Shown here: in pieces, positions 4,301 to 48,463 of the stretch | Numbering within the stretch: the stretch's first letter is position 1 | Layout of the letters: the number at the start of each line of letters is the position of its first letter | Assembly (NCBI RefSeq): GCF_006345805.1 | Contig: NC_043020.1 | Span: forward strand, 11,904,001-11,968,000 | Reading direction: 5' to 3' | Length of the DNA stretch: 64,000 nucleotides | From: Octopus sinensis | Lineage: Eukaryota | Program-made: the position numbers and the translations under genes | Notes under the pieces: model-generated | What the model was told of the DNA's origin: nothing | The model's database searches: none | Seen by the model: only the letters and a program-made list of their open reading frames with translations

Positions 4301-4428
4301 GCCAGGTTGAGATCTAGTTGAAATATTGTTGGTTTCCGAAATAAGAAATCGATTTTTACCAACTCCTTGGACCAAAAGAAGGCTCGTTGCATGACAACGA
4401 AGCAAAATGCAGGCGTTTTGAAGAATTT
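1319..4428 (-). CDS. Intronless GAF-GAF cyclic-nucleotide phosphodiesterase, PDE5/6/11 class, type A copy 1 (5' end lost in assembly gap)
   Basis: Uninterrupted ORF with GAF-A (LNKLDGDNFDSSDE), GAF-B and catalytic motifs YHNWQH, HDIDHRG, LENHH, ATDL, TAADL..ITKPW, EFFTQGD, MQVGFIDFV; ends KRLAICVIC (CaaX). Near-identical to 22126-25235. Confidence 0.92.
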
Positions 4429-4528
4429 NNNNNNNNNNNNNNNNNNNNNNNNNNNNNNNNNNNNNNNNNNNNNNNNNNNNNNNNNNNNNNNNNNNNNNNN
4501 NNNNNNNNNNNNNNNNNNNNNNNNNNNN
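4429..4528. other. Assembly gap (100 N)
   Basis: Run of exactly 100 N; sequence left of it matches A2 up to ~25235, sequence right of it is unrelated. Confidence 1.
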
Positions 4529-4787
4529 CATTAAAGAGCAACATTAAATCGTTGGAGGGTGTGTGTGAGAGTGTGTGTATGTGTGTGTGAGAGTGTGTGT
4601 GTGAGTGTGTGTATGTGAGAGTGTGTGTATGTATGTGTACGTGTGTGAGAGTGTGTGCATGTCTGTGTGTGAGTGTGTAATTTTAATATTTCTATTATTG
4701 AAAACAAGTGGATGTATTCCACCGTAACTAGGTAAATAGAATCTTCGAACGGAGACGGTCAGTAGCGACACCTGCAGGTCTGACTAC

Positions 4788-5671: not shown

Positions 5672-8600
5672 CTAGAATATCATGCACATTTTGCTTTTTA
5701 AAACGGTTAGTCTTTGAGGAGGGTTTGGTTTCGCAGTGATTTTCGCGCATTTCCGTTGTCGATTATCGTTGTTCAAATTTGGATTTTTTAACTTCAAGTC
5801 TGCTTGCGGTTTAAAACCTTCAGTGTTTTCATTTCCTTCCGTGCTCTTAGGTTTTTCTGAGAGATTCTCTGGGATTCTGTAAGATTCTGTGTTTCCCTGT
5901 GTTTTTCTGTAAGATTCTGTGTTTCCCTGTGTTTTTCTGTCAGATTCTGTGTTTTTCTGTGTTTTTCTGTCAGATTCTGTGTTTTCCGGTGTGTTTCTGT
6001 CAGATTCTGTGTTTTCCTGTGTTTTTCTGTCAGACGATGCTTTTGAAAAACTTCCCCTTACAGTATATTGAGAACTAATTTCCGAGATGGTTTCGTCTGA
6101 TGTCATGCTTTTGATGCTTTTGTTATATTCGGGTTCTGAAGATGATAGTTTTTGCCGTACTGGTGGTTGAAAAACACGACTTATTCTTTTGAATGGTTGG
6201 GTGGTTCATCAGGTAAGGCATTCAGAGCCTGACTTCCTCGTCGGCTTTGTGATAATTCGCTACGTTTGTTCTCAGCAACTTCATCGATCCAACTAGTTCG
6301 TCTTTGCCGGTTGATTGGAGGCAAAGGCTGAGTTGGTTGTACATGATTACTGTAAGCTTTTCTCCGTAAAGATAACTTATCTTGTCCAATGTTAGATTCT
6401 TCTAGTGTTTCTAAAGATATCACTGGTTGTTCGTGTGGCATTGTAATCGGTAAGTGCTCTGATTCTCTCAAAGAAGGCCTTTCTGTTTGAGTTATTGCCG
6501 AAAACACTTTCAGAAGTCGAGGTTCAGTTTGACTATCCGCTGTTTTTGTCTCAACATTGTTCAAAGATGGTTTGGTAGTTTTTTGTTGACATATATCTAT
6601 TGGGATTGAAATATCAGTCTGAGTAACCTTTTGCTCTTGATTAAATGTGAAAAGAGTTTGGGTCGAAACACCCGTGTCTCCTATATCTTCGACTGTCATA
6701 GCACTATCCAGCGAAATGTTATATAAAACTAATTGGAATTCTCTATCAACATCAAATTTTTCCTCACCATTTGCAATATGAGACCAATGAGCTCTGTTTT
6801 CGAGCATCCCATCGTAAAGAGGTTTTAATTCCTCATGCACCTGATGAAGAAGTTTGTAAAGTAATGTACACACAAAATCAATAAAACCAACTTGCATTTT
6901 GGGCAATTCGTATCTTTTACTGCGATCCATCATAGGCAACACAGGATATTTACATTGGGTTTCTATGTCACCTTGTTCGAAGAATTCGGCTGCGACCATA
7001 ATAGCAGTCTTTCTTTGAACCTCCCATGGCTTAGTAATAGCTGAAAGGTCACACGCAGTCATCATCATGCTAATAAGTAAATCAATGGTTTCTTGAGATG
7101 ACAACGTTTGGTCTTCGACTTCTATTTTGCGTTTGAAAATATTTCTTCTCTCAAAATATACTACGAGATCCGTGGCAATGATTGCTTTCTCGATTAATTT
7201 GAGACCCTTCTGATATTTTTCAGCTGGAACGTTTTTAAAAATATTTGTATCTTCAGTTTTTAATATCCTGATACTTTGATCTATATGATGGTTTTCCAAC
7301 ACAGACGTACTGTAAAGAGTAGCAAGAGGAGATGCCGTCTTCACTTGAAATGCATTATTATATCCTCTATGATCAAGATCATGACACAAAGCAGCCACCA
7401 ATAGGCAAATCTGCTCAAATTCTGTGAAATAATTTTGCAATTTGCCAGTAGTCAACATACAAAACATCATTTGAGTAACATTGATAGCATGACGCCAATT
7501 ATGATAGATGACAGGTCGATAGTTCTTTTTAACAGTTAGTATCCACCTATATAATAATTCTTTAGATATGTTGAGAACGGGCAATGTTTTGGCATCTAAA
7601 AATATGCGAACGACCAACAAAACAGTGTCATCCTCTGAATATATGAAGTCATTGAAATCGAATCGATAAATTTGGTAAAAACCTGAAGATAGTACCTCCA
7701 TACTTAAAAAATTATCTACAATTTCTGGATAACAAGTAATATAGTAGCTAAGTACTTTGTTTGTAAATTCTAGCTGTTCCAGCATATTTGATGCAGTTTC
7801 ATAAAGACGGCAATTATAGATAGCTAAACCGCAGAACATTGCAAATATTTCCATCATGCTGATATCATTTTGACTAAAAATATCCTTTGAATCTTTGATG
7901 TATACGATCCAACCAAGAAAATTCTTACCGGCATCTCTAATAGCTAAACAAAGCAACTGACTCTCAATCTTATATTCGAGATTTACGCTGTCAGACTCAG
8001 TAAGGTTCCCCGAAAGAAATAAATCGAAAGTATTTCCGCTGTTAATATTTTGTTCAATTGCTTTCTTTACTTTAGGTGTTATAATTTGTTCTGAGATATC
8101 TGAAGCTCCTTTCAATAAGTGAAAAACTTTGGAAGAATCAGTTGGGCAAAGGTTATCCTTTTTCGGATCAATCAAATAAATGCTGATACTCTCACACTGT
8201 AACATTTCCATGGCGAGTTTGGTAATTTCGGACATTAGTTTCGGTAGAGAATTTTGATATTTTAGTATACATCGATTCAGTCTTAGTAATAACTTGTGTT
8301 GTGTGAATTCCTCAAATGATCTTCGCAAGAAAGTATTGCTTCTTATACTAATGGCACAAAAGGACAAAAAACTCTCGCAGATCATTTGGTCTTCAGCATC
8401 AAAATAGAGATTATCTCTTTTATTTATTATTTGAGCGACAGCTAACAACTATCATCAGTGTCTAGAATTGGCATGCATAGAATGCTTTTGGTACGATGTC
8501 CAATTTTTTCGTCGACTTCACTTAAGAAACGAGGATCCTGATACACATCCTTAATATTTAAGAGATACTTATTATCAGCTACAAATCCTGCAATACCTTT

Positions 8601-9080
8601 TCCGAAGGGAATGCGTAGTGCGTTTTCTTCAGTATGAAGTGATTGTTCAAGAGTAGAGTCAGATGTAATATCAAACAGGGTCGACATTAGATATTGAACT
8701 TTTCCAACTCCTCGAACCATAAAAAGATTTGCTCTTTCACTGTGAAGTAAGATACATAAATTCTGAAGAACTTTATGACAGACAAAGTGTATATGAATCT
8801 CGGAATTAAGAACTTTCAATATTTCTTTGTACTTTTCATTTGTAGTAAGAGATTCGGCTTGGTTTCTTCGGGAAAGTTTCTTATGAAACACTATGTTTTG
8901 TAAGAAGTCTATAAAGGAATCTACTGCTTCTTCCTTTAATTTTTGATTGTATAATTCTTCCCCCAAGTCACCCAGTCCTCGCCTAGAGAGCCATGATCTA
9001 ACGAATACTGGATTCTTCGACAAGAAATCATCCACATCTTCTTCAGTAAGTCCTGCTTTCTCAGTAAATTTTGTTGCCAT
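5672..9080 (-). CDS. Intronless GAF-GAF phosphodiesterase type B copy 1 (~1136 aa after correcting two 1-bp deletions)
   Basis: ORF pieces 8442-9104, 6181-8448 and 5672-6106 join when compared with intact B2: AAA->AA near 8450 and TTT->TT near 6205. First ATG at 9080 (track start 9104 is TTG). YHNWRH, HDLDH, TACD, MQVGFIDFV intact; ends KSKMCMIF. Confidence 0.88.
5882..6031 (-). repeat. Coding 30-bp tandem repeat, 5 units (DRKTQENTES-like) in B1 tail
   Basis: Units such as GACAGAAAAACACAGGAAAACACAGAATCT, in frame. Confidence 0.9.
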
Positions 9081-9248
9081 GTTTCTTTTAAGTTTAATTT
9101 CCAAACAAGGTTCAATGATGCTTCTAAGTATTCTAGAAAACGTTTCATGAAAATTTCTGTATTTCTTGATTTTATTTTAAATCAGTAGTCTTCGCTACTT
9201 GAAATTAGAAGCAGGCAGCAGACATGCTTTCGTGGTTTGTCTTCGAAA

Positions 9249-12654: not shown

Positions 12655-15600
12655 TTATGAAATCTTACACACATACTTTTCCATAAAATCGTCCTGCCTT
12701 TTGGTTCTCTTGCTTGTAAGAACTGGTTTACTCCGTGGAATTTTCTTTAAACATTTTCTTCTTCGACCTTGATTGAGGTCTTTCACTGCAACATTAGAAA
12801 TTTTTTCTCTTTCTTCTGCACTCATTGTAAATCTTTCCATGTCTAGCGTCTGTTTAGAGATCACAGGTCTCAAAGCTCTCATCTTTTGTTCAGGCGTTTC
12901 AAATGTTACACAAGCAGCTGTCCAGCTACCTATGTCTGACGAACAACCCATCGCTTCTTGTTCTGCTCCATCGAGATTCATACTTGTAGGGAATTTATTT
13001 GTTTTTAACCATGAGTCTGAAAATGTTTTGGGTGGTTCAAGGGACATGGCTCTACTAAGAAATCCAGGTTGGCTACAGAACTCACTATCACCATTTGAAA
13101 ATTTCACTTGCGTCCCTATATTAATTTTTCGGATTCTTTTACCGATTGGCCTTACCGTTACTGCGAGAAGTTTTTCCGCATAAAAACTTTTTATGGCGTT
13201 CGTTAAAGCACGAGATTCGGAGTAAGACATTGTAGACAAATCATCATCCGTTTGAGATGTCTTTTGACGTAGTCGTTGACTTTCTTCAGCGAGAACAAAA
13301 GTAGTCTGAGTAGACGATGTTGCCATTCCTAACGCAACATTTTCAGAGTGAATCCGTGATATTTTAGGTGTTACAATTTTGTGATATTTTGCTCCTTTCA
13401 AACTCATTTCTTCATTATAAAGAGTCTCAATTTCGGAATCAATGTCAAAAAACTCGATGCCTTCAGCTATATGGGCCCAGTGATTTCGATTCTCCAATGC
13501 CCCTTCATACAGATGAGTCAGATTAGCATCCATTTCAGATAAAACTTGAAAAATCGGAACACATTGAGTATCAAAATACTTCACTTCCATTTCAGGAAAT
13601 TTGTATCTATTTTCACGATCCATGAGATCTTCGACATCTTTCTGTAAAGTTTTTTCTTGATCCCCCTGCTCGAAAAATTCAGCTGCAATCTTAACTGCAG
13701 CATTTCTTTCAAACGACCATGGCTTTGTAGTAGCTGAAAGATCACAGGCTGCCATTATAACGGTTATTAATAAATCAATGCTTTCTTGACACTGAAAACC
13801 TTTGTCGCCCTTTTTGATTTCCTCTCTAAAACTTTTAATTACTTCATTAAGATCTTTTACATCTGTGCCAAGAATCGCTTTCTCGATAAATTTAAGACCG
13901 TGCTGATAATTTTCAGCCGAGAGATTCTGGAATATATTGGTTTCGGCGGTGTTTAACATCCTGATAGCTCTATCTATATGATGGTGTTCCAAGACGGACG
14001 TATCGTATAATGTAGTGAGCGGAGATGATATCTTCACTTGAAATTTATTATTTGTCCCTCTGTGGTCAAGATCATGCAATAAAGAAGCAATAAGGGAACA
14101 AATCTGTTCAAATTCTGTGAAATAATATTGTATTCGTGAACAGGTCAAAAAATAAAACATCATTTGAAATACCAGTACACCGTGGCGCCAGTTATGGAAA
14201 ATATTTGGGCGATAATTCTTCTTTGCTGTTAAAATAAACCTGTATAAAATATCAATCGGTAAATTTAATATGGTCAAAGCATTTTTATCAAGAAACACAC
14301 GAGCACACAACGAAACAATTTCATCATCTGTAAATACAGATTCAATAAAGGCATAGGAATATAATTGATACTCTTCAGCGGATCGTGGCTCGACTTTTAA
14401 GAAAGGTTCGATAAGTTTCCGGTCGCATGTGGTATGAAATGCCAGCACATCGTTCATTACTTCTCCCTGTGCCAACATCCTAACAGAACGTTCATATATG
14501 CGACAATTATGAATACTGATTCCACAAATCAATGCAAACGTCTCCATTAGGTTGATGTCACTTTGGTCGAAAACATCTTTGGAATGTCTTTCAAATATTA
14601 TGCAACCGACGACCTCACTTGTAGCATTTGTTATTGTCATACACAGTAGCCAACGGCCGACATCACCTTCAACAGTGATTAACCTCTCTTTTGATTCACC
14701 TTGTAATCGAATTATATCGATTATATTGATACTTTTTAAATTTCGGCCAATTGGTATTATATATTTCGGATCTAACGGAACTTCCTCCACTTCTTCTTCA
14801 TCTTTTAATAACTGGAAAACGTTAGACGATATCGTCGGAGAGGCCGCATCCATTCTGTTTTCTGTCAAACAAACAGAAATCTTGCTACAGTCTAACATAT
14901 CCATGGCATGTCGAAGAATTTCTGATATAAGCTTTCGAAAATTGATTTGCTCTTTCAGAACAAATTTGACAAGTTTTAGCAATAACTTGTGGCGTTTAAA
15001 TTCCACTTGTGATATTTCTAACAACCGTTCGTTGATTATACTGATTCCGCAAAACGACAAAAAGTTCTGAAATATAATTTCATCATTCGAATCGAAATAA
15101 CGATCATGTTTCTTATTCAATGCTTGAGCTACACCTATTACGACGTCATCTCTATCCTTAATTGGTACAGATAGAATACTTTTCGTACAGAACCCCGTTG
15201 ATTTATCAATCTCATGTAAAAAACGTTCGTCTTCGTAGGCATCTTTAATGTTCAATAGACAACTGTATTCAGCTACATATCCGACAATTCCTTTCCGAAA
15301 GGAATGCGAATGGCATTTTCTTCGTTGTGAATTGTATCCTCCATAACCGAGGTGGCTGTAACGTCAAAGAGCTTGGAAACTAAGTGTAGCTTTTTAGCAG
15401 TTCCATGTAACAGAAATAGGCTCGCTCTCTCACAATCGAGGATGATACAAGCATTTTGAAGAATTTTATGACACTGTTTGTCGACATTGACTTCGAAAAC
15501 AGTGTCTTTTACAAACTCTCTGTATATTTCATTCTCTGTCACTACTGAACTATACCCTCTTGATTTTGATTTCACCTCCTGTAATACTGTATCACTTGTA

Positions 15601-15758
15601 GTTGCACTATAACCGGTCTCTCCCGGTACTTTCAACGTGCATTTAAGGCTTTGCCTTTTGACGTCCACTGTAAAATGCCGAGATTGCCATTTGCGAACGA
15701 AATCTGGATTATTCTGTAAGAAATTTTCAACCTCATCTTGCTGTAAATCATCCATCAT
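12655..15758 (-). CDS. Intronless GAF-GAF phosphodiesterase type C (~1034 aa after correcting one 1-bp deletion), atypical active site
   Basis: 15273-15758 and 12655-15255 join at IPFG-KGIVG (GGAAAAGGA read as GGAAAGGA near 15297). ATG at 15758 is preceded by an in-frame TAA. Metal ligands HNWRH, HDLDH, AACD retained; invariant Q replaced (MEVKYFD); ends KYVCKIS. Confidence 0.88.
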
Positions 15759-21453: not shown

Positions 21454-24400
21454 GTATTATGTATGTATGTATGTATGTATGTATGTATGTATGTATATTT
21501 TTATGTATGTATGTATGTATGTATGTATGTATACAGGGTGAGAGTGAATGTTAGGTTGTGTGTGTGGTCTGTGTTTCTGTCTGTCGGCAGTAAAATACAT
21601 TGTTACCAGCTCGTAGCTTCGAGATTTCGAGAGTGTGATTATGTTTTTTGAATGACATTGTCGGGTAGGTGTGAGAGGCCAGATATGGTCGGTTTAGATT
21701 TAAACATGAAACACAGCAGAATATTTGAGTTTGATTTGCTGGTTTAAATGCCAAAGTTTGAAACCAGAAACTTAAATATTTGCTAATCAATTTATTTAAT
21801 TTAATTACTCTCTCAACGGCATATTTTAATATCTTTTGTGAGGGCGATGAGGTGGCACAATCGTTAGTATCGGAATATATGCCTCACCATATTTGTCCCT
21901 CGTCTATACCTTCTGAAGTCAAATCCCGCCGAGGTTAACTTTACGTTACATTTCTTCGGAGTACGAGTCAAGGAATGGATTCAATGATTTCGACTAATCC
22001 CGCATCCTCTCCTCAAAAATGTCGGCTTTGTGCATAAAGAAGAAAACATTTTAATGCCTTTGTTATTTCATTTTTATTTTCGTTACTAGAACACCAGTTG
22101 TTCCTCCGGCCCATATAATGGTAGTCTAACAAACCACACAAATAACCAATCTTTTACGCCTTTGAGAATTCTTTGGAACAGCTTTCACACATTTTCGTTT
22201 TCGAAACTCCATATTCTGTGTCGTATCTTTTTTCATTATTGAACTCGATCTTTTAAACACACTGTCCTTTCGATCTCTCAGTATAGAAAGTGACTTTCGA
22301 GCCACAGGTATTCTACTTTTTGTACTATCACTACCCTCGTATGCATCCGTCCAAGACAGTCTGTTCTTTTTTGGCGTAGTTATCTGTACCTCTTTACTCT
22401 TCTTACGAACATTTTCGTTCTCCTTAATGGGAGATTTCACCGATATTTCGGATTTCAAAGAAGACTTCTTCGGAATGTTTTCAAACAAAACTTCATCTCT
22501 TTGAGAAATTTCCCCAATCGAAAACCGTATGGTAGACGAACTTCTGTTGAATATATAATCACTGGAACGTGTTTGTGTGCTTTCCCGTCGTACTGGGTTC
22601 GGTGGTAAAATAACACGCGATGATCTTTTTATAGACAAAGGTTTTTCTAAACAGAGTGCATTTCTAAATGATTTTCCTTTTTCCTGCTCTAATTCCCGGC
22701 GTCTTTCGTAAAGAAGCTCATCGAAACAACTTGATCGTCTTGCTGTATAAGGCGACCTGTATAATGACGACTTGGAACGTGATGAAACTATAGTTTCTGA
22801 TCCCGAGTAGTTCCCAGATTTTGTTAAAGTGGACGGTTGTCGTCTGAATACGTGTGGTTGTGGTTCATCGGGTGAGGCTTCACCTGTACGTGTAGCAGGT
22901 ACATAAGTCTGAACAGATACTTCGCTTACAGTTGGGGATCGTTCATCGGTTTGACAATTCTTTGTTACTCTAGTAATCATCTCAGTTTCCGGTGAAACAG
23001 GTATTGTTAGATCATCCACAGTGACTAATTCTTCAATAGGATAAGAAAGTATGGTTTGGATGGTTTGTTGCTCTAGCACCACATTTAAATATGTTAGAAC
23101 TGTCTGTGTGGCTACATTTACTTGTAACATCGGAGTAGTCGTACTCGATATCGGTACTCCTGAGTAAAACGTCTTTAAAGCTAATTCATACTCTTTCTTA
23201 ATATCAAATATTTCATCACCATTTGCAATACCAGCCCAGTGAGCTCTGTTGTCGAGCATCCCATGATATAAAGGCTCCAATTCTTCATGCAGTTCTGACA
23301 AAGTTTTATAAAGCAGTGTACTCACAAAATCAATAAAACCAACTTGCATTTGTGGTATTTCGCGTATACAATTGCGATCCATTAACGGCAACAGAGGAAT
23401 ATCATAAGCTCTTTCCATGTCTCCTTGTGTAAAGAATTCCTCAGCCATTAACATGACTGAGAATTTTTGAAAATCCCATGGCTTGGTAATAGCTGTAAGA
23501 TCAGCTGCAGTCATTATCATACTAGTTAATAATTCAACGCTTTCTCGAGACTCAAAAGTTTTGTTACCGTCTTCGATGTGTTTTCTAAAAGTGTTTCTTT
23601 TCAAAAAATAATCTACAAGGTCTGTAGCGAGGATTGCTTTCTCGATAAATTTGAGAGCCTTCTTATATTTTTCAGCTGAAACGTTTTTTAAAATATTTGT
23701 ATCTTCATTTTGCAATATCATGATACTTCGATTTATATGATGGTTTTCCAACACAGACGTATTGTAGAGAGTAGCAAGAGGCGATGCTGTATTCACTTGG
23801 AATGCATTATTGGTTCCTCTGTGATCAATGTCATGAAACAAGCAAGCTATTAGCAGACATATTAGTTCAAATTCTTTGAAATATACTTGTAATCTACCGG
23901 TGGTCAACATACAAAACATTGCTTGAGTAACATTGACAGCATGCTGCCAATTATGGTAGGTAAGAGGACGATAGTTTTTTTTCACAGTTAGTATCCATCT
24001 ATACAAAGTAAACTTGGATATTTTCAATGAATTTAGAGCGTTCATTTCTATAAAGATAAGAGCAGTCAATATAACCTGTTCGTCTTCTGAGTATAAATAA
24101 CTAATAAAATTGTAAGAGTAAAGTTTATAGTGACTTGTTGTGCGAATGTCTTGATGTTGCATGTCATAAGCTTCTTCTTCTTCGCAAGTCGTGTGAAACT
24201 GAAGCAATTCGTATGCGAAATCTTGGCTGGATGTTATTTTATTGCAACTTTTGTACAAATGGTCGTTATAAATCGCCAGTCCGCAGAAAATGGCAAATGT
24301 CTCCAACATATTAATGTCATTTTCACTAAAGGTATTAATCGTCTTCCTGAGAAACATCATATAACCAATTACACTATCGCGATCACCGTGTATTGTCACG

Positions 24401-25235
24401 CAAATTATCCAATTTAGTATATCACCATCCAATGTGATTTTGGTTTTCCATTTGGTTCTATCATGTAAATTAGTCACGCTAACTACATTCACCATGCTAG
24501 CACTATTCATATTTCGTTCAATAAATGATATGAACATTGGGTCTATAGGAGTATTTTTTACTTTAGTGTCTCCCTTCAAAAGTTGTAAAACGTTCGCTGA
24601 CTCGGTCAGTTGACGTGCATCGTCTATATCATCACTTAAATAGATGCTGATATTATCACAGTCCAGCATTTTGATGGCGTATTGAAGAATTTCAGATACA
24701 AGTCTCTGGAAATCCTCCCCCGTTTTCAAAAAACACCGACCGAGTTTCAATAACATTTGATGCCGTATTGTTTCTCCTTGGGCAGCTTTAAAGAACTGAT
24801 CATTGTTGAGATTCAGAGCACAAATTTTCGAGAAACATTCGAATAAGTTTTCATCACTAGAATCGAAATTATCTCCATCCAATTTATTCAATGCTTTAGC
24901 TACTCCTATCACACGATCGTTTTTATCGAAAATTGGTAGCGAAAGAATCGATCTAATTTGACAGTTAGTCTCTCTCATATTTTCCGTAAGGCGTGAATCA
25001 CGCCACGCTTCTTTAATATTTACTAAACATTCGTTTTCCGCTACGAAACCAACAATTCCTTCGCCAAATGGTAGATGAACCGTGTCTTCTTCTGTATTAT
25101 CTATTTCGCCAGGTTGAGATCTAGTTGAAATATTGTTGGTTTCCGAAATAAGAAATCGATTTTTACCAACTCCTTGGACCAAAAGAAGGCTCGTTGCATG
25201 ACAACGAAGCAAAATGCAGGCGTTTTGAAGAATTT
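21440..25235. repeat. Direct segmental duplication of PDE type A (partner ~670-4428)
   Basis: Near-identical from the (TATG)n/CAGGGTGAGAGTG flank to the gap edge. Confidence 0.92.
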
Positions 25236-25534
25236 TTTTAGTAACTCTCGTTGAATTAATGTCTGACTGAACCACTTTGAGTGTATCTCTGAACAAATTC
25301 ATCTTACTAACAGGTAACTCTGGTTCCTCAACCAAATTCTCAAGATATTCAGTTGGATCTTGTTTGGGAGACAGTTTAACCCCAAAATTTTAGGGCAGCT
25401 TTTGATAAAATCTTATGTTTCGAAAAATCGGGTGCTATTTCTTCCATGCCGTGTTCTGAAAGCCATTTATCAACGAATTCTGGGTTGTCATGAAGGAAAT
25501 CTCTTATGTCTTCTTCTGTCAGACCTGTAGACAT
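22126..25534 (-). CDS. Intronless GAF-GAF phosphodiesterase type A copy 2 (~1135 aa including N-terminus hidden by a 1-bp insertion)
   Basis: The track ORF starts at TTG 25335, but ATG 25534 encodes MSTGLTEEDIRDFLHDNPEFVDKWL (family N-terminal motif) and joins after removing one base in AAAATTTTGGGG (25380-25391). Catalytic motifs intact; ends KRLVICVVC. Confidence 0.9.
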
Positions 25535-33468: not shown

Positions 33469-36400
33469 ATGGTGGACCCTATTTGCGCAGACGACGTGGA
33501 AAAGTTTTTAGAAGAAAATCCAGAATTCACTAAAAACTGGATTTCTAAAAACAATGCTAATACTTCTGAAGAGAAAGTTGTTGTGGTTCCGTCTTTAAGA
33601 CATTCATTTATAGATTGCGTTAAAATGATTATTTCTCGAAACAGCAGCATTGGTGTAAACAAGAAAACGGTATTAACCGCAAAGGACACTTACAGAGAAA
33701 TCATGAAGGAATTGGTTTCCGAGCTTAATGAAGATAAATTGTGTTATGCAATTCTTCAGAACACGTGTATTTTGCTCCAGTGTAGTAGCGCGAGTATTTA
33801 TTTGGCTCGAGGTACCGGAAAGACGCGTTATCTTTTATCTAAATACGTCGACGTGACCGCTACTTCTGACAGAAATGAAACCCTTCGTTCAGAACCCGAT
33901 ACCATTTGTATACCATTCGGTGAAGGAATCTTGGGTTATGTAGCTGAAAGTAAGCGTTCTTTGAACATCAAAGATGTCACTCGGTCTCATTATTCTTTAA
34001 GTGATGACAAATCGATTGGACTTCAAGTCCAAAGTATTTTTTGTATGCCGATTCTAAATAAAAACGATAATGTAATGGGTGTTGTTAATGTCCAGAACAG
34101 CAAAGAAAATACTAATTTTTCTTTAGAAGATGAAACATTATTTGAGAACTTATTATCCGTTTGTGGAATCAGTATAGATAATGCTCATTTGCTTCAAGTT
34201 TGTCTTGAAGAATTTAAACGCCACCAGTTATTACTAAAGCTCACGAACTGCATTTTGAAGGAACAGAACAATCTACCAAAGCTTATTTCTCAAATTTTGC
34301 ACCATGCCATGGCGCTGATTGAGAGTAGTAATATCAGCATCTATTTAACTGACAGTAACAAAGAAACAGTTGGTCCAAATATGAATTCTAAAGTGTTTCA
34401 ATTATTGAGAGAAGAGAAAGAAGCAAAAGAAGTGACAATAGATAGGAAATTTATAAAACCTGTTGAAAATAATTTGAAGAGTGAAAATGTATTCGATGTT
34501 TTCAATTTAAAATGTTCTTCTGAAATCTCGCTTCCAAATCTCAAAAACAGCGAAAGGTGGTTACTTGTTATGCCAATAAAAGATTCCACGGGAAACGCTA
34601 TTGGTTCTATTATGTTTGTCAGGGATTCGGTGGACAATTTCAGTGAAAATGATATCAATATGATGAAAGTATTTACAACATATTGCGGTTTGAGTATCTT
34701 CAACTGTCGTTTGTACGAGAGTTCAGCTAAGTCGGTGTCTCGGGCGAAAATAATCAATGATATTATTGCCTACCACGTGACGTGTGATCAAAAAACAATC
34801 GATCGTTTTCTATCAATGGAAATGAAATCTTCAGAACACTATCAAATATACAATTTTCACTTCGATGATTCATTATACACAGATGGTGATACTGTTTTAA
34901 TATGTGCCCGGTTGCTTTTAAATCTTGATGTTGTAAATGTTCTGAATATATCTATGGCTTATTTGTATAGGTTTATTGTAACAGTGAAAGACAACTATCG
35001 TCCACTTACCTACCATAACTGGCGCCATGTTTTAAACGTTACACAATCAATGTTCTGTATGTTGACTACAGGTAAATTACAGACTTACTACACGAAATTC
35101 CAAATGATTTGTTTATTAATTGCTTGTTTGCTTCATGATCTTGAGCACAGAGGGCAGAATAATTCGTTCCAAGTGAGAGTAGCATCTTCGCTTGCTACAT
35201 TGTACAGTACGTCTTTCCTAGAGCACCGTCATATAAGTCGAAGCATGATGCTATTGAACAAATCCGGAACTGATATCTTTAAAAATCTTCCGGTTGAAAA
35301 GTATCGAGAGGGTTTCAGACTAATAGAGAAAGCAATCCTTGCCACGGATCTCAGGAACCATTTTGAGAATAGGAGCATTTTTAAACATGAAATACAAAGT
35401 GATCACAGAACGTTTGATTCTCTTGAAAGTATTGATTTACTAATTGGCATGATGATGACTGCAGCTGATCTGTCGGTTGCGACTAAGCCATGGGAAATTC
35501 AAAGAAAGACCGCCATCAAAGTCATATCTGAATACTTCGATCAAGGAGAGCCGGGTAAAGCTTTAAAATCTTATGTGTTTCCTTTGGTGGATCGCGAGAA
35601 AAAATATGAAATAACTAAGGCACAAGTTGATTTTATTGATTTTGTGTGTATGCCGATTTATAAACTTTTGGTAAAGTTAGAAACGCGTTTGAGACCATTA
35701 TATGACGGGTGCATCGCAAACGGAACGCGCTGGCGTCTTATTGCTGCTGATAAAGAAAAGTTTAATATCGATGAAGAATTAAATTTTGTTTCACATCAGA
35801 GATTAAGAGTTAACCAACCAAAACAGTACCAAGAATTCCGAAGTAGCTCAATGGATATTCAAAATCGAAATAACAAGATTTTAGAACCAATATTAGATGA
35901 ATTTCGATCACCTATAGCATTAAATTTAATTACAGAACATAATCCCTCCCTATGGTGTCATTCACAACCATTGTTAGTGCCTAAACTAAACAAGCTTACT
36001 AAGTTAAAATCACCAATTTCTGCTTGTTCATGGCAAGAAAACATTGTGAAGTTAACTATGGCTGTGCCTCATAAAAAAGTTGAAATAAATGAGAAATCTT
36101 GTCAGACAGACATGCAAATCGTTAAATTACACCCCGGAAACACCGTACAAATATATAATCCCAAAGGTAAACTTACTTCAGAAGGTCCGATGAAAGTTAG
36201 TCTTCCAGTTAAAACAACTTATTCAACCACAGTTCATTCAGATATCAATGAATCTACGACTGGCAAACGCTCGAATAGCATTGCTAAATCTATGCAACGT
36301 CGAAATTATATCCCGACATTGGCTCTTTCACCGAATTCACTGGGAACACCAATAGGCGTGAAAACACTCATAAAACATACTAATTCGACTCGCCTTTTTG

Positions 36401-36630
36401 ATAATGTTAAACACGTCGTCACCGATGATATTTGTAGAGTTTCTGAAAAACTAAACGGGAAAATACGGCGAAATCTGACTGTAAATGAATATAATGAGGT
36501 TCCTACTGTAGAATATGACTTTACACCAAATATTAATCAGTTTCGAAGGCGAAAATGTTTGAAGAAAATTCCCATTAATATGAAGGACGAGCAAGTTATT
36601 TTGAAGAGTTATTTGTGTGTGATTTCATAA
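33469..36630 (+). CDS. Intronless GAF-GAF phosphodiesterase type D (1053 aa, intact ORF)
   Basis: MVDPICADDVEKFLEENPEF; YHNWRH, HDLEH, ATDL, TAADL..TKPW, AQVDFIDFV; ends RRRKCLKKIP...KSYLCVIS. Confidence 0.95.
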   Translation: MVDPICADDVEKFLEENPEFTKNWISKNNANTSEEKVVVVPSLRHSFIDCVKMIISRNSSIGVNKKTVLTAKDTYREIMKELVSELNEDKLCYAILQNTCILLQCSSASIYLARGTGKTRYLLSKYVDVTATSDRNETLRSEPDTICIPFGEGILGYVAESKRSLNIKDVTRSHYSLSDDKSIGLQVQSIFCMPILNKNDNVMGVVNVQNSKENTNFSLEDETLFENLLSVCGISIDNAHLLQVCLEEFKRHQLLLKLTNCILKEQNNLPKLISQILHHAMALIESSNISIYLTDSNKETVGPNMNSKVFQLLREEKEAKEVTIDRKFIKPVENNLKSENVFDVFNLKCSSEISLPNLKNSERWLLVMPIKDSTGNAIGSIMFVRDSVDNFSENDINMMKVFTTYCGLSIFNCRLYESSAKSVSRAKIINDIIAYHVTCDQKTIDRFLSMEMKSSEHYQIYNFHFDDSLYTDGDTVLICARLLLNLDVVNVLNISMAYLYRFIVTVKDNYRPLTYHNWRHVLNVTQSMFCMLTTGKLQTYYTKFQMICLLIACLLHDLEHRGQNNSFQVRVASSLATLYSTSFLEHRHISRSMMLLNKSGTDIFKNLPVEKYREGFRLIEKAILATDLRNHFENRSIFKHEIQSDHRTFDSLESIDLLIGMMMTAADLSVATKPWEIQRKTAIKVISEYFDQGEPGKALKSYVFPLVDREKKYEITKAQVDFIDFVCMPIYKLLVKLETRLRPLYDGCIANGTRWRLIAADKEKFNIDEELNFVSHQRLRVNQPKQYQEFRSSSMDIQNRNNKILEPILDEFRSPIALNLITEHNPSLWCHSQPLLVPKLNKLTKLKSPISACSWQENIVKLTMAVPHKKVEINEKSCQTDMQIVKLHPGNTVQIYNPKGKLTSEGPMKVSLPVKTTYSTTVHSDINESTTGKRSNSIAKSMQRRNYIPTLALSPNSLGTPIGVKTLIKHTNSTRLFDNVKHVVTDDICRVSEKLNGKIRRNLTVNEYNEVPTVEYDFTPNINQFRRRKCLKKIPINMKDEQVILKSYLCVIS

Positions 36631-44541: not shown

Positions 44542-44992
44542 GCGGGGAAGTTCCAGATACTGTGGAGAATTGAACCAAATTCCAGCAACAATGTATTCAC
44601 GTTCTTCGTAGTGTGTTTGGTTCGATCCAGCATCAACTGTACTTTCGATTTGATTATTATCAACAACACAGAACATAATATGATTCAGAGTGAGGATCGT
44701 TTTGTCTTAGACTAATAAAGCCAAGGGCAAATTATGCAGGTGTGTCATCTACAACTCGATCGTTTGACGATTTTGAATATTTTGTCATAATTTTACTTAC
44801 GTCACAACAGATTATTCGGCGTCATTTCGAAGACAAACCACGAAAGCATGTCTGCTGCCTGCTTCTAATTTCAAGTAGCGAAGACTACTGATTTAAAATA
44901 AAATCAAGAAATACAGAAATTTTCATGAAACGTTTTCTAGAATACTTAGAAGCATCATTGTACCTTGTTTGGAAATTAAACTTAAAAGAAAC

Positions 44993-47900
44993 ATGGAAAC
45001 AAAATTTACTGAGAAAGCAGGACTTACTGAAGAAGATGTGGATGATTTCTTGTCGAAGAATCCAGAATTCGTTAGATCATGGCTCTCTAGGCGAGGACTG
45101 GGTGACTTGGGGGAAGATTTATACAATCAAAAATTAAAGGAAGAAGCAGTAGATTCCTTTATAGGTTTTGTACAAAACATTTTCATTCATAAGAAACTTT
45201 CCCGAAGATACCAAGCCGAATCTCTTACTACAAATGAAAAGTACAAAGAAATATTGAAAGTTCTTAATTCCGAGATTCATATACACTTTGTCTGTCATAA
45301 AGTTCTTCAGAATTTATGTATCTTACTTCACAGTGAAAGAGCAAATCTTTTTATGGTTCGAGGAGTTGGAAAAGTTCAATATCTAATGTCGACCCTGTTT
45401 GATATTACACCTGACTCTACTCTTGAACAATCACTTCATACTGAAGAAAACGCACTACGCATTCCCTTCGGAAAAGGTATTTCAGGATTTGTAGCTCAAA
45501 ATAGATGTCTATTAAATATTAAGGATGTGTATCAGGATCCTCGTTTCTTAAGTGAAGTCGACGAAAAAATTGGACATCGTACCAAAAGCATTCTATGCAT
45601 GCCAATTCTAGACAATGATGATAGTTTGTTAGCTGTCGCTCAAATAATAAATAAAAGAGATAATCTCTATTTTGATGCTGAAGACCAAATGATCTGCGAG
45701 AGTTTTTTGTCCTTTTGTGCCATTAGTATAAGAAGCAATACTTTCTTGCGAAGATCATTTGAGGAATTCACACAACACAAGTTATTACTAAGACTGAATC
45801 GATGTATACTAAAATATCAAAATTCTCTACCGAAACTAATGTCCGAAATTACCAAACTCGCCATGGAAATGTTACAGTGTGAGAGTATCAGCATTTATTT
45901 GATTGATCCGAAAAAGGATAACCTTTGCCCAACTGATTCTTCCAAAGTTTTTCACTTATTGAAAGGAGCTTCAGATATCTCAGAACAAATTATAACACCT
46001 AAAGTAAAGAAAGCAATTGAACAAAATATTAACAGCGGAAATACTTTCGATTTATTTCTTTCGGGGAACCTTACTGAGTCTGACAGCGTAAATCTCGAAT
46101 ATAAGATTGAGAGTCAGTTGCTTTGTTTAGCTATTAGAGATGCCGGTAAGAATTTTCTTGGTTGGATCGTATACATCAAAGATTCAAGGGATATTTTTAG
46201 TCAAAATGATATCAGCATGATGGAAATATTTGCAATGTTCTGCGGTTTAGCTATCTATAATTGCCGTCTTTATGAAACTGCATCAAATATGCTGGAACAG
46301 CTAGAATTTACAAACAAAGTACTTAGCTACTATATTACTTGTTATCCAGAAATTGTAGATAATTTTTTAAGTATGGAGGTACTATCTTCAGGTTTTTACC
46401 AAATTTATCGATTCGATTTCAATGACTTCATATATTCAGAGGATGACACTGTTTTGTTGGTCGTTCGCATATTTTTAGATGCCAAAACATTGCCCGTTCT
46501 CAACATATCTAAAGAATTATTATATAGGTGGATACTAACTGTTAAAAAGAACTATCGACCTGTCATCTATCATAATTGGCGTCATGCTATCAATGTTACT
46601 CAAATGATGTTTTGTATGTTGACTACTGGCAAATTGCAAAATTATTTCACAGAATTTGAGCAGATTTGCCTATTGGTGGCTGCTTTGTGTCATGATCTTG
46701 ATCATAGAGGATATAATAATGCATTTCAAGTGAAGACGGCATCTCCTCTTGCTACTCTTTACAGTACCTCTGTGTTGGAAAATCATCATATAGATCGAAG
46801 TATCAGGATATTAAAAACTGAAGATACAAATATTTTTAAAAACGTTCCAGCTGAAAAATATCAGAAGGGTCTCAAATTAATCGAGAAAGCAATCATTGCT
46901 ACGGATCTCGTAGTATATTTTGAGAAAAAAAATATTTTCAAACGCAAAATAGAAGTCGAAGACCAAACGTTGTCATCTCAAGAAACCATTGATTTACTTA
47001 TTAGCATGATGATGACTGCGTGTGACCTTTCAGCTATTACTAAGCCATGGGAGGTTCAAAGAAAGACTGCTATTATGGTCGCAGCCGAATTCTTCGAACA
47101 AGGTGACATAGAAACCAAATGTAAATATTTTGTGTTGCCTATGATGGATCGCAGTAAAAGATACGAATTGCCCAAAATGCAAGTTGGTTTTATTGATTTT
47201 GTGTGTACATTACTTTACAAACTTCTTCATCAGGTGCATGAGGAATTAAAACCTCTTTACGATGGGATGCTCGAAAACAGAGCTCATTGGTCTCATATTG
47301 CAAATGGTGAGGAAGAATTTGATGTTGATAGAGAGTTCCAATTAGTTTTACATAACATTTCGCTGGATAGTGCTATGACAGTCGGAGATATAGGAGACAC
47401 GGGTGTTTCGACCCAAACTCTTTTCACATTTAATCAAGAGCAAAAGGTTACTCAGACTGATATTTCAATCCCAATAGATATATGTCAACAAAAAACTACC
47501 AAACCATCTTTGAACAATGTTGAGACAAAAACAGCGGATAGTCAAACTGAACCTCGACTTCTGAAAGTGTCTTCGGCAATAACTCAAACAGAAAGGCCTT
47601 CTTTGAGAGAATCAGAGCACTTACCGATTACAATGCCACACGAACAACCAGTGATATCTTTAGAAACACTAGAAGAATCTAACATTGGACAAGATAAGTT
47701 ATCTTTACGGAGAAAAGCTTACAGTAATCATGCACAACCAACTCAGCCTTTGCCTCCAATCAACCGGCAAAGACGAACTAGTTGGATCGATGAAGTTGCT
47801 GAGAACAAACGTAGCGAATTATCACAAAGCCGACGAGGAAGTCAGGCTCTGAATGCCTTACCTGATGAAACCACCCAACCATTCAAAAGAATAAGTCGTG

Positions 47901-48463
47901 TTTTTCAACCACCAGTACGGCAAAAACTATCATCTTCAGAACCCGAATATAACAAAAGCATCAAAAGCATGACATCAGACGAAACCATCTCGGAAATTAG
48001 TTCTCAATATACTGTAAGGGGAAGTTTTTCAAAAGCATCGTTTGACAGAAAAACACAGGAAAACACAGAATCTGACAGAAACACACAGGAAAACCCAGAA
48101 TCTGACAGAAAAACACAGAAAAACACAGAATCTGACAGAAAAACACAGGGAAACACAGAATCTGACAGAAAAACACAGGGAAACAGAGAATCTTACAGAA
48201 AAACACAGGAAAACACAGAATCTGACAGAAAAACACAGGGAAACACAGAATCTTACAGAATCCCAGAGAATCTCTCAGAAAAACCTAAGAGCACGGAAGG
48301 AAATGAAAACACTGAAGGTTTTAAACCGCAAGCAGACTTGAAGTTAAAAAATCCAAATTTGAACAACGATAATCGACAACGGAAATGCGCGAAAATCACT
48401 GCGAAACCAAACCCTCCTCAAAGACTAACCGTTTTAAAAAGCAAAATGTGCATGATATTCTAG
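44993..48463 (+). CDS. Intronless GAF-GAF phosphodiesterase type B copy 2 (1156 aa, intact ORF)
   Basis: ATG at 44993 (track start 44969 is TTG); GLTEEDVDDFLSKNPEF, LFDI, DPRF, YHNWRH, HDLDH, TACD, LPKMQVGFIDFVC; ends KSKMCMIF. Confidence 0.96.
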   Translation: METKFTEKAGLTEEDVDDFLSKNPEFVRSWLSRRGLGDLGEDLYNQKLKEEAVDSFIGFVQNIFIHKKLSRRYQAESLTTNEKYKEILKVLNSEIHIHFVCHKVLQNLCILLHSERANLFMVRGVGKVQYLMSTLFDITPDSTLEQSLHTEENALRIPFGKGISGFVAQNRCLLNIKDVYQDPRFLSEVDEKIGHRTKSILCMPILDNDDSLLAVAQIINKRDNLYFDAEDQMICESFLSFCAISIRSNTFLRRSFEEFTQHKLLLRLNRCILKYQNSLPKLMSEITKLAMEMLQCESISIYLIDPKKDNLCPTDSSKVFHLLKGASDISEQIITPKVKKAIEQNINSGNTFDLFLSGNLTESDSVNLEYKIESQLLCLAIRDAGKNFLGWIVYIKDSRDIFSQNDISMMEIFAMFCGLAIYNCRLYETASNMLEQLEFTNKVLSYYITCYPEIVDNFLSMEVLSSGFYQIYRFDFNDFIYSEDDTVLLVVRIFLDAKTLPVLNISKELLYRWILTVKKNYRPVIYHNWRHAINVTQMMFCMLTTGKLQNYFTEFEQICLLVAALCHDLDHRGYNNAFQVKTASPLATLYSTSVLENHHIDRSIRILKTEDTNIFKNVPAEKYQKGLKLIEKAIIATDLVVYFEKKNIFKRKIEVEDQTLSSQETIDLLISMMMTACDLSAITKPWEVQRKTAIMVAAEFFEQGDIETKCKYFVLPMMDRSKRYELPKMQVGFIDFVCTLLYKLLHQVHEELKPLYDGMLENRAHWSHIANGEEEFDVDREFQLVLHNISLDSAMTVGDIGDTGVSTQTLFTFNQEQKVTQTDISIPIDICQQKTTKPSLNNVETKTADSQTEPRLLKVSSAITQTERPSLRESEHLPITMPHEQPVISLETLEESNIGQDKLSLRRKAYSNHAQPTQPLPPINRQRRTSWIDEVAENKRSELSQSRRGSQALNALPDETTQPFKRISRVFQPPVRQKLSSSEPEYNKSIKSMTSDETISEISSQYTVRGSFSKASFDRKTQENTESDRNTQENPESDRKTQKNTESDRKTQGNTESDRKTQGNRESYRKTQENTESDRKTQGNTESYRIPENLSEKPKSTEGNENTEGFKPQADLKLKNPNLNNDNRQRKCAKITAKPNPPQRLTVLKSKMCMIF
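48044..48253 (+). repeat. Coding 30-bp tandem repeat, 7 units, in B2 tail
   Basis: DRKTQENTES-like x7 versus x5 in B1. Confidence 0.92.

What the first reader, a model, noticed from the sequence alone, without database searches (positions are those of the whole stretch)
36540..36630. Conserved bipartite membrane anchor: RxRKCxK basic motif plus CaaX with differing X residues
Seen: all six proteins end in CaaX (A1 CVIC, A2 CVVC, B CMIF, C CKIS, D CVIS). About 20-30 residues upstream all have a basic motif with a Cys (A RKRKCVK, B RQRKCAK, C and D RRRKCLKKIP), although the ~300-aa tails around it have diverged beyond recognition. Established: X=S/C favours farnesylation and X=F/L permits geranylgeranylation; vertebrate rod PDE6 alpha and beta are differentially prenylated; polybasic stretches and nearby palmitoylated Cys act as second membrane signals. 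Inference: selected membrane targeting, with B prenylated differently from A, C and D.
Basis: partly seen in the sequence, partly recalled or inferred. Interest (0 to 1): 0.72.

Follow-up and report, generated by a model that had tools for sequence, protein, structure and literature searches.

The report
Octopus PDE tail lipid-anchor module
The flagged 90 bases encode the end of an octopus cGMP phosphodiesterase, where a prenylation signal already known for this enzyme family sits about 20 residues after a selected basic-plus-cysteine motif, whose cysteine replaces a likely phosphorylation site found in other animals.

Summary
The window is octopus DNA carrying six intronless PDE5/6-type genes (GAF-GAF-PDEase). 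All end in Cxxx, and all have R-x-R-K-C-x-K 17-28 residues before the CaaX cysteine. Only four are independent: A1/A2 and B/B2 are about 99% identical recent duplicates, and B2 is frameshifted.

The CaaX box is not new. 89 of 114 invertebrate PDE5/6-like relatives, from cnidarians to amphioxus, end in Cxxx, and Drosophila PDE6 prenylation is published.

The upstream motif is clearly selected. The tails evolve near-neutrally (dN/dS 0.8-2.3) and are predicted disordered. Across five octopus paralogues, four of the five invariant tail columns are the motif's R, R, C and the CaaX Cys.

New here: in gastropods, hemichordates, urchins, amphioxus, a horseshoe crab and an anemone, the same position (17-23 residues upstream) holds a [KR][KR]x[S/T] kinase-type site. 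The octopus cysteine therefore replaces a phospho-acceptor.

The claim that B is prenylated differently is weak. O. bimaculoides B ends CMIS rather than CMIF, a single-base difference.

Best reading: a prenyl anchor plus a basic second membrane signal, with the cysteine possibly S-acylated. Lipidation is untested. It is a new variant of a known kind, of moderate interest.

The parts
33469..36630 (+). Gene D: intronless 1053-aa PDE5/6-type cGMP phosphodiesterase (GAF-A, GAF-B, PDEase_I, then a disordered tail of about 285 aa)
   Evidence: ORF. Pfam PDEase_I E=6.8e-71 and GAF E=1.2e-18. Best PDB matches are PDE5 and PDE6. The AF2 core has pLDDT 75-97 and the tail (residues 782-1053) is below 50. 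The O. bimaculoides orthologue P0002 is 88% identical.
36544..36564 (+). D basic-Cys motif RRRKCLK (aa 1026-1032), preceded by Phe at 36541-36543
   Evidence: Conserved as R[KR]RKCLK in two other octopods (P0002, P0003), with a synonymous TGT/TGC change at the Cys codon.
36616..36630 (+). D CaaX box CVIS plus the TAA stop
   Evidence: CVIS is identical in three octopod species. AATAAA signals lie 124 and 138 nt downstream.
1319..4531 (-). Gene A1 (1070-codon ORF containing a 100-N assembly gap at 4429-4528). Motif RKRKCVK at 1376-1396. CaaX CVIC at 1322-1333.
   Evidence: Lies in a duplication (656-4428 matching 21458-25235, 99.0% identical) with A2.
22126..25335 (-). Gene A2 (1069-aa ORF; the N-terminal 52 aa are encoded at 25534-25379 in another frame). 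Motif RKRKCVK at 22183-22203. CaaX CVVC at 22129-22140.
   Evidence: 96-97% identical over this ORF to three O. vulgaris proteins (P0006, P0155, P0156), which end CVVC, CVIC and CVIC.
44969..48463 (+). Gene B (1164 aa). The tail contains a 10-aa tandem repeat TQxNTESDRK. Motif RQRKCAK at 48374-48394. CaaX CMIF at 48449-48460.
   Evidence: The O. bimaculoides orthologue P0166 has RRRKCAK ... CMIS.
5672..9104 (-). B2: a 98.6% identical inverted copy of B with two frameshifts (near 8448 and near 6205) and a 60-nt repeat deletion. It is either a young pseudogene or an assembly error. The tail frame keeps RQRKCAK (5741-5761) and CMIF (5675-5686).
12655..15758 (-). Gene C (866-aa ORF at 12655-15255, plus an N-terminal piece at 15291-15758 in another frame). 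Motif RRRKCLK at 12745-12765. CaaX CKIS at 12658-12669.
   Evidence: The O. bimaculoides orthologue P0010 has RRRKCLR ... CTIS.

Best explanation
The flagged bases encode the C-terminal targeting module of an octopus PDE5/6-type cGMP phosphodiesterase. The enzyme core (GAF-A, GAF-B, catalytic domain) is followed by a disordered, fast-evolving tail of 260-380 residues. The last 30-40 residues of that tail form a conserved short-linear-motif module.

Step 1 follows from family knowledge. The CaaX cysteine is prenylated. X = S, C or A predicts farnesyl. X = F is ambiguous between farnesyl and geranylgeranyl. This tethers the enzyme to membranes on a long flexible leash, as in vertebrate PDE6 and Drosophila PDE6.

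Step 2 is inference. The basic patch R-x-R-K-C-hydrophobic-K carries a net charge of about +4 to +6. Lying 17-28 residues upstream, it supplies the second, electrostatic membrane contact that a farnesyl group alone needs.

Step 3 is shown by comparison. This patch is the octopus form of an older element, [KR][KR]x[S/T], placed 17-23 residues before the CaaX Cys in PDE5/6-like enzymes of several other phyla. There it looks like a PKA/PKG/PKC-type site that could act as a prenyl-electrostatic switch.

Step 4 is inference and the weakest step. In the octopus clade the phospho-acceptor became Cys and was then kept. This removes the phospho-switch and may create an S-acylation site, giving constitutive or acylation-controlled rather than kinase-controlled membrane binding.
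For: - Domain identity.
- The tail is predicted disordered and the module does not dock on the core.
- Tail dN/dS between octopus species is 0.78-2.27, against 0.36-0.66 for the core.
- Four of the five invariant tail columns across five paralogues are R, R, C of the motif and the CaaX Cys. Shuffled tails give a mean of 1.1 invariant columns.
- The motif and CaaX are kept in orthologues from O. bimaculoides, O. vulgaris and a third octopod, in the unlinked paralogue E (FRERKRRCLQK ... CVIA) and in ENA protein P0018 (EKRKCAPR ... CSII).
- Synonymous differences at the motif codons (TGT/TGC, CGA/CGG/AGA) and unrelated flanking codons argue against gene conversion.
- CaaX is ancestral. 89 of 114 relatives end in Cxxx, and K/R is enriched at -4 (85%) and -2 (64%).
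- A prenylation site that governs localisation is reported for Drosophila PDE6, with a C1128S mutant allele (Day et al. 2008, cited in PMC4595086).
- [KR][KR]x[S/T] with the S/T at -17 to -26 occurs in 13 of 61 dereplicated relatives. Whole-tail shuffles give 2.3±1.5. No shuffle of 500 reaches the observed best window family-wise. Local shuffles give 4.9±2.1.
- Anchored on the CaaX Cys, gastropod GKRKT/KKRT (d=18-20) lines up with octopus RKRKC/RRRKC (d=17-21).
- A basal clade member, P0009, has RRVT instead of the Cys motif.
- Prenyl-electrostatic switches and prenyl-phospho hybrid motifs are established in other proteins (PMC8361095, PMC3690454).
Against: - No lipidation, localisation or expression data exist for any of these proteins.
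- The motif lies 17-28 residues from the CaaX. That is further than the classical polybasic or palmitoyl second signals of Ras and Rho proteins, as far as I recall.
- The linker between motif and CaaX is not consistently basic. It is acidic in D and E.
- The Argonauta A-like protein keeps RVRKK and CITS but has lost the Cys.
- Outside the octopus clade there is no enrichment of Cys at -10 to -32 (1.0% against 0.4-2.0% elsewhere), so acylation there is not a family trait.
- The [KR][KR]x[S/T] enrichment counts related lineages, and the distance window was chosen after looking. The local-shuffle control reached 14 once in 1000, against 13 observed.
- Core dN/dS of 0.4-0.66 and a frameshifted copy show that the whole gene family is under fairly relaxed constraint.
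Confidence: 0.55

Rival explanations
1. The motif is a protein-docking element rather than a membrane contact. It would be a former basophilic kinase site turned into a non-phosphorylatable pseudosubstrate-like or docking site for PKA, PKG or PKC, or a calmodulin-binding polybasic-lipidated terminus. The CaaX box alone would provide anchoring.
For: The Cys occupies the phospho-acceptor position of a [KR][KR]x[S/T] element seen in other phyla. The pattern basic(-2), basic(-1), C, hydrophobic(+1), K(+2) resembles basophilic kinase consensus sites (my own knowledge). Two further RRxS-type islands in the tails of A, B and E suggest a kinase-regulated disordered region. Calmodulin binding to polybasic-lipidated termini is described in PMC7216078.
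Against: No partner is known. Pseudosubstrates usually act within a kinase, not on its substrate. The module does not dock on the catalytic core in the AF2 model. Its constant closeness to the prenyl site across phyla fits a membrane-proximal role more simply.
Confidence: 0.15
2. The motif is a nuclear localisation signal. Together with farnesylation it would send the enzyme to the nuclear envelope, as the NLS plus CaaX combination does in lamins.
For: Runs of four basic residues (RKRK, RRRK, RKRR) occur in A, C, D, E and in O. bimaculoides B.
Against: The strict monopartite consensus K-[KR]-x-[KR] is not met in A, B or D, read directly from the sequences. B in the window has only RQRK. An NLS does not explain the invariant Cys or the constant spacing to the CaaX Cys.
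Confidence: 0.08
3. The invariant R-x-R is an arginine-based ER retrieval (COPI) signal. It would hold the prenylated enzyme on the ER or endomembranes, placed at the distance from the membrane that such signals need.
For: R-x-R is invariant in octopus paralogues A to E. It is preceded by Phe in A, D and E, which fits the hydrophobic/R-R-x-R form. The spacing of 17-28 residues from the lipid anchor fits the reported need for distance from the bilayer (my own knowledge of this signal class, not checked here).
Against: P0018 (EKRKC) and the gastropod forms (GKRKT) lack R-x-R. The acidic x in E (RER) is unfavourable. The signal is described for multimeric transmembrane proteins, not prenyl-anchored enzymes. 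It does not explain the Cys or the K at +2.
Confidence: 0.07
4. The motif has no specific function. Its similarity would be left over from common descent, kept by chance or by gene conversion among clustered paralogues.
For: The genes are clustered and recently duplicated. Constraint on the family is relaxed.
Against: The rest of the tail has diverged to shuffle level while the motif and CaaX columns stay invariant across five paralogues, including the unlinked E. Codons differ at synonymous sites and the flanking codons are unrelated, so no conversion tract is seen. The motif persists between species where the tail dN/dS is about 1.
Confidence: 0.04

Closest known systems
Drosophila PDE6 (CG8279) and the invertebrate 'cGMP-specific PDE5/6-like' enzymes, including sea urchin sperm PDE5
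   Same: The same GAF-GAF-PDEase core. A long C-terminal tail, giving proteins of about 900-1250 aa. A C-terminal CaaX box preceded by K/R at -4 and -2. For the fly enzyme, a prenylation site whose loss (the C1128S allele) alters subcellular localisation is reported (Day et al. 2008, cited in PMC4595086).
   Different: The octopus genes are intronless, tandemly amplified and fast-evolving: about 36-38% core identity to a snail enzyme, against 51% between starfish and snail. Their X residue is mostly S, C or A (farnesyl type), whereas L dominates elsewhere. They carry Cys where relatives have S/T in the upstream basic element. In the fly enzyme the basic KKRS element lies directly next to the CaaX box.
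Vertebrate rod and cone PDE6 catalytic subunits
   Same: A related catalytic core and C-terminal CaaX prenylation. Alpha is farnesylated and beta geranylgeranylated, which is established knowledge. The bird PDE6B sequences retrieved here end CSIL.
   Different: Vertebrate PDE6 has a short tail. No R-x-R-K-C-x-K motif was seen in the bird PDE6B tails. In a rough NJ tree the octopus clade does not nest inside vertebrate PDE6. The paralogue-specific difference in prenyl type is fixed in vertebrates, but for octopus B it is not conserved between species.
Two-signal C-terminal anchors of Ras/Rho GTPases (K-Ras4B polybasic plus farnesyl; H-Ras and K-Ras4A palmitoyl-Cys plus farnesyl; Rac1 polybasic plus Cys178) and their phospho-switches (K-Ras4B S181, RhoA S188, Rnd3)
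   Same: The same logic of CaaX plus an upstream basic patch and/or an acylatable Cys. In relatives, a basophilic S/T site sits in or near the patch (the details of the GTPases are from my own knowledge, PMC8361095 and PMC3690454).
   Different: The second element lies 17-28 residues from the CaaX Cys rather than about 2-11. The module ends a 300-residue disordered tail of an enzyme rather than a GTPase hypervariable region. This is a functional analogy only, with no homology.

Membership tests
Class I cyclic-nucleotide PDE, PDE5/6/11 (tandem-GAF) group | PDEase_I catalytic domain with the HD(x)xH metal-binding signature | tested here: met
   Pfam PF00233 at E=1e-67 to 1e-85 in all copies. HNW(R/Q)H and HD[LI][DE]HRG are read directly in the translations.
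Class I cyclic-nucleotide PDE, PDE5/6/11 (tandem-GAF) group | Two N-terminal GAF domains | tested here: met
   Pfam GAF hits. The AF2 model shows two alpha/beta GAF-like modules joined by long helices, with pLDDT 75-91. Full-length matches to PDE5 structures 9lss and 3bjc cover residues 76-770.
Invertebrate PDE5/6-like (DmPDE6-type) subfamily | Groups with DmPDE6-type, mollusc and echinoderm PDE5-like enzymes rather than PDE11, PDE2 or PDE10 | tested here: inconclusive
   An NJ tree on 751 columns places the octopus clade with the PDE5/6-like group and apart from PDE11. It is a distance tree with long branches and no support values.
CaaX prenylation substrates | Cys at position -4 from a genuine C-terminus | tested here: met
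   True of all six copies. The same stops are used in NCBI gene models of O. bimaculoides and O. vulgaris. AATAAA lies 48-231 nt downstream. No transcript data were available.
CaaX prenylation substrates | Aliphatic a2 residue, with X deciding between FTase (S, C, A, M, Q) and GGTase-I (L, with F able to serve either) | tested here: met
   a2 is I or V in every copy. X is C (A1, A2), F (B, B2) or S (C, D). The enzyme preference is inferred from established rules, not measured.
CaaX prenylation substrates | Covalent isoprenoid on the Cys | not testable with these tools
   This needs metabolic or click labelling, or mass spectrometry.
Ras/Rho-type two-signal anchors | Polybasic stretch or palmitoyl-Cys within about a dozen residues of the CaaX Cys | tested here: not met
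   The motif Cys lies 17, 21, 28 and 20 residues upstream. The intervening linker is acidic or neutral in D and E. So this works like such an anchor at most; it is not a member.
Basophilic (PKA/PKG/PKC-type) phosphorylation site [KR][KR]x[S/T] | Ser or Thr acceptor after two or three basic residues | tested here: not met
   The octopus copies have Cys at the acceptor position. Relatives in six other groups have S/T there.
Classical monopartite NLS | K-[KR]-x-[KR] | tested here: not met
   Reading the motifs: RKRKCVK, RQRKCAK and RRRKCLK contain no K-[KR]-x-[KR]. Only the looser 'four basic residues in a row' rule is met, and not by B.
Arginine-based ER retrieval signal | [hydrophobic or R]-R-x-R exposed in the cytosol | tested here: inconclusive
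   FRKR (A), FRRR (D) and FRER (E) fit. C (GRRR) and B (NRQR) fit only the minimal R-x-R. P0018 (EKRK) does not fit.

The most novel reading that the evidence does not exclude
A metazoan-wide regulatory element, a basophilic phospho-acceptor about 20 residues upstream of the prenylated cysteine of PDE5/6-like phosphodiesterases (a prenyl-electrostatic switch that would let PKA or PKG release the enzyme from membranes), was converted in the octopus retrogene family into an S-acylatable cysteine. A kinase-controlled membrane switch would thus have been exchanged for a lipid-controlled one, and the exchange was then fixed in every paralogue.
Probability: 0.2. Interest if true: 0.6.

Novelty: new variant of a known kind. 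Interest (0 to 1): 0.38.

Why it matters
If the module works as proposed, it does three things.

First, it defines a compact, portable membrane-targeting tag of 30-40 residues for cephalopod cGMP phosphodiesterases.

Second, it points to an element in invertebrate PDE5/6-like enzymes that I did not find described: a basophilic S/T site at a fixed distance from the prenyl-Cys. Such a site could couple cyclic-nucleotide kinases to the membrane residence of the enzyme that degrades their activator.

Third, it gives a natural S/T-to-Cys swap with which to test how phosphorylation and acylation substitute for each other next to a prenyl anchor.

It does not change the general picture. PDE6-type enzymes are already known to be prenylated, and two-signal anchors are textbook.

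Tried and rejected
- (1) 'Fossil CaaX'. The idea was that RKRK-C-V-K-A is an old polybasic-CaaX terminus extended by stop-codon loss. Rejected, because gastropods, hemichordates, urchins and others already have both the upstream basic element and the distal CaaX at the same spacing.
- (2) Gene conversion as the cause of motif identity. Rejected on codon differences and unrelated flanks.
- (3) An upstream Cys as a general family trait. Tested and not found: Cys frequency at -10 to -32 is 1.0%, no higher than elsewhere in the tails. Echinoderms do have their own conserved QCKEAL Cys at -14.
- (4) Docking of the module onto the catalytic domain, in the manner of the vertebrate inhibitory gamma subunit. 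The AF2 model gives no support: the tail has pLDDT 25-36.
- (5) O. bimaculoides paralogue F (P0007) lacks a CaaX box. Its ORF runs into a microsatellite and an assembly gap, so this is inconclusive.
- (6) Logan contigs as transcript evidence. They are colinear with the genome and end at microsatellites, so they say nothing about mRNA ends.
- (7) Literature. No paper was found on octopus PDE amplification or on C-terminal phosphorylation of invertebrate PDE5/6. The hits in PMC12607849 concern unrelated venom ENPP-type enzymes. The sea urchin PDE5 paper was not held.
- (8) The species behind ENA assembly ERZ21867824 (P0018, P0009) and the Logan runs SRR118693xx could not be identified.

Full report
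WHAT IS THERE

The window is AT-rich eukaryotic DNA with microsatellites and LINE-type retrotransposon remains. The flagged bases 36540-36630 are the last 29 codons and the stop of a 1053-codon uninterrupted ORF, gene D at 33469-36630 (+). It has Pfam GAF and PDEase_I domains. Its best matches among solved structures are full-length PDE5, then PDE6. Its closest database relative is an Octopus bimaculoides 'cGMP-specific 3',5'-cyclic phosphodiesterase', 88% identical. Other copies are 95-98% identical to O. vulgaris proteins. The window therefore comes from an octopus of the O. vulgaris/sinensis group.

The window holds six such genes: A1, A2, B, B2, C and D. All are single-exon over essentially the whole protein. 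Their relatives are also single-exon in O. bimaculoides and Argonauta, and the two related proteins from an unidentified ENA assembly likewise lie in continuous ORFs.

A1/A2 lie in a 99.0% identical duplication and B/B2 in a 98.6% identical inverted duplication. B2 has two frameshifts. In C and A2 the N-terminal coding piece lies in another frame than the main ORF. The six copies are therefore four independent paralogues.

THE OBSERVATION

It holds. Every copy has R-x-R-K-C-x-K and ends in Cxxx, with 17-28 residues between the two cysteines. B2 does too, once its tail is read in the frame of B. The CaaX boxes are CVIC, CVVC, CMIF (twice), CKIS and CVIS.

IS IT SELECTED?

Between octopus species the catalytic core has dN/dS 0.36-0.66. 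The tail has 0.78-2.27, which is close to neutral. AlphaFold2 with a 36-sequence alignment folds the core well (pLDDT 75-97). It gives pLDDT 25-36 for residues 782-1053, so the tail is predicted disordered and the terminal module does not pack on the enzyme.

I aligned the tails of five paralogues: A to D plus E. E is an unlinked fifth paralogue found in O. bimaculoides (P0167, FRERKRRCLQK ... CVIA). Only 5 of 429 columns are invariant, and four of them are R, R and C of the motif and the CaaX Cys. Shuffled tails give 1.1 invariant columns on average.

The motif codons differ at synonymous sites between paralogues and between species (TGT/TGC, CGA/CGG/AGA), and the neighbouring codons are unrelated. 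Recent gene conversion therefore does not explain the identity. The module is a selected short linear motif at the end of a drifting disordered tail.

THE CaaX BOX IS ANCESTRAL AND KNOWN

A profile search of 1.84 billion representative proteins and a named search of the 5.8-billion set recovered the invertebrate PDE5/6-like family. Of 114 close relatives, 89 end in Cxxx. They include anemones and corals, echinoderms (among them sea urchin 'sperm phosphodiesterase 5'), hemichordates, amphioxus, molluscs, an annelid, a nemertean, arthropods and rotifers.

K/R is found at -4 in 85% and at -2 in 64% of dereplicated tails. The octopus copies share this proximal K-S-x-hydrophobic-C pattern. [quoted passage not shown] Prenylation of vertebrate PDE6 is established knowledge. 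This half of the finding is a new instance of something known.

THE X RESIDUE

B ends CMIF in the window and in O. vulgaris but CMIS in O. bimaculoides, a single TTC/TCC difference. C ends CKIS here and CTIS there. The copies of A vary between CVIC and CVVC. Across the family X is L (28), S (10), V (7), I (7), M (5) and others. The inference that B is prenylated differently as a selected property of that paralogue is therefore weak. At most it is a recent change in one species group. From my own recollection, not checked here, X = F can serve both transferases.

WHAT THE UPSTREAM MOTIF IS

Outside the octopus clade, Cys is not enriched 10-32 residues before the CaaX Cys. Basic residues are: K/R frequency shows a second bump around -20 to -25.

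The pattern [KR][KR]x[S/T], with the S/T at -17 to -26, occurs in 13 of 61 dereplicated relatives. Whole-tail shuffles give 2.3±1.5. No shuffle of 500 reaches the observed best window family-wise. Shuffling only the last 40 residues gives 4.9±2.1.

Anchored on the CaaX Cys, the sequences line up:
- Caenogastropods: GKRKT, d = 19-20.
- Heterobranchs: KKRT and related forms, d = 17-18.
- Hemichordates: RRTS and RRSS, d = 19.
- Sea urchins: KKRAS and KKRGS, d = 20.
- Amphioxus: KKIS, d = 23.
- A horseshoe crab: RRNS, d = 19.
- An anemone: KKSS, d = 17.
- Octopus: RKRKC, RQRKC, RRRKC and RKRRC, d = 17-21, and 28 in C.

The octopus cysteine therefore stands where relatives have the acceptor of a basophilic kinase consensus. 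Within the clade, ENA protein P0018 has EKRKC plus CSII. Its companion from the same assembly, P0009, has RRVT and no CaaX. The Argonauta A-like protein keeps RVRKK and CITS but has lost the Cys.

The enrichment counts related lineages and the distance window was chosen after inspection. I treat the homology of the element as well supported within molluscs and as suggestive beyond them.

MECHANISM

The reading I commit to is a prenyl anchor on a long flexible leash, helped by a basic patch that contacts acidic lipids. In the octopus clade the central residue of the patch changed from a phosphorylatable S/T to Cys. That would abolish a prenyl-electrostatic switch of the kind known for K-Ras4B, RhoA and Rnd3 (PMC8361095, PMC3690454). 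It may also create an S-acylation site.

- Shown: domain identity, conservation, disorder of the tail, spacing, and the positional equivalence to S/T sites.
- Inferred: prenylation, by family precedent.
- Inferred more weakly: the electrostatic role of the patch.
- Weakest inference: acylation of the Cys.

Against the classical two-signal model, the patch is further from the CaaX than in Ras or Rho proteins, and the linker is acidic in D and E.

The rivals are a kinase- or calmodulin-docking element, an NLS, an R-x-R ER-retrieval signal, and no function. They are listed with their tests. None explains the invariant Cys together with the constant spacing any better.

VERDICT

The CaaX part is already known for the family. 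The differential-prenylation claim does not survive comparison between species. The upstream motif is a real, selected element whose likely ancestry, a phospho-acceptor site near the prenyl anchor, I did not find described. It is a new variant of a known kind, with interest about 0.38.

Noticed in passing
window 33234-33241 and 15970-15977: A perfect cAMP-response-element palindrome, TGACGTCA, lies 228 bp upstream of the ATG of gene D and 212 bp upstream of the N-terminal ORF of gene C. These are the only two copies in 64 kb (0.83 expected by chance; 21 of 100 shuffles had 2 or more). The D copy is conserved in another octopod (L008). Two TGACGTC sites lie upstream of paralogue E in L003. This may mean cAMP/CREB-responsive promoters for these PDE genes.
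   Followed up: partly
window 22711-22743 and 22600-22629 (A2, minus strand); 47771-47818 and 47885-47914 (B): Two further conserved islands lie in otherwise divergent tails. One is RR[ST]S..DE[ILV] (ARRSSCFDELL in A, QRRTSWIDEVA in B). The other is [KR]RxS..V[IF]xPP (KRSSRVILPP in A, KRISRVFQPP in B). Forms of them also occur in paralogue E and in the unassigned ENA clade members P0018 and P0009; not every one of these carries both. C and D lack them. Both look like RRxS kinase sites.
   Followed up: partly
window 5672-9104 (-): B2 is a 98.6% identical inverted duplicate of B with two 1-bp frameshifts and a 60-nt repeat contraction. It is either a very young pseudogene or an assembly error in homopolymer runs.
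   Followed up: partly
window about 48070-48310 (B tail): B has a tandem 30-nt (10-aa) repeat, TQ(E/G/K)NTESDRK, in about eight copies in its tail. B2 has two fewer. The O. bimaculoides and O. vulgaris B proteins differ in length here. The region is a rapidly changing low-complexity insert.
   Followed up: no
window 9495-11000, 27559-29504, 56036-59123: These are LINE-type retrotransposon remains: RVT_1, zf-RVT and an Exo_endo_phos endonuclease. They are GC-richer (0.47-0.51) than the surrounding DNA (0.30-0.39). The segments 9534-11485 and 27559-29504 are 83% identical copies. Such elements could have supplied the reverse transcriptase for the retroposition that made this intronless gene family.
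   Followed up: partly
loci L001, L007, L009 (O. bimaculoides CM046624.1, 10.42-11.09 Mb) and L006 (Argonauta hians): The cluster is conserved in O. bimaculoides, where C, D and B appear in the same order on one strand within 23 kb. There is also an extra C-like copy, and a B-like paralogue F about 650 kb away. Argonauta has an intronless A-like gene. No multi-exon 'parent' PDE5/6-like gene from a cephalopod appeared among the top hits.
   Followed up: partly
relatives P0207, P0219, P0263, P0267, P0268 (echinoderms): Echinoderm PDE5-like tails carry their own conserved cysteine in Q-C-K-[ED]-A-L-A, 14 residues before the CaaX Cys and just downstream of the KKRGS site. In the one Diadema sequence the Cys is replaced by Tyr.
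   Followed up: no
window 32900-33200 and 36690-36750: Long (TG)n-rich and (TA)n microsatellites bracket gene D. Contigs from other octopods break at the same repeats (L008).
   Followed up: no
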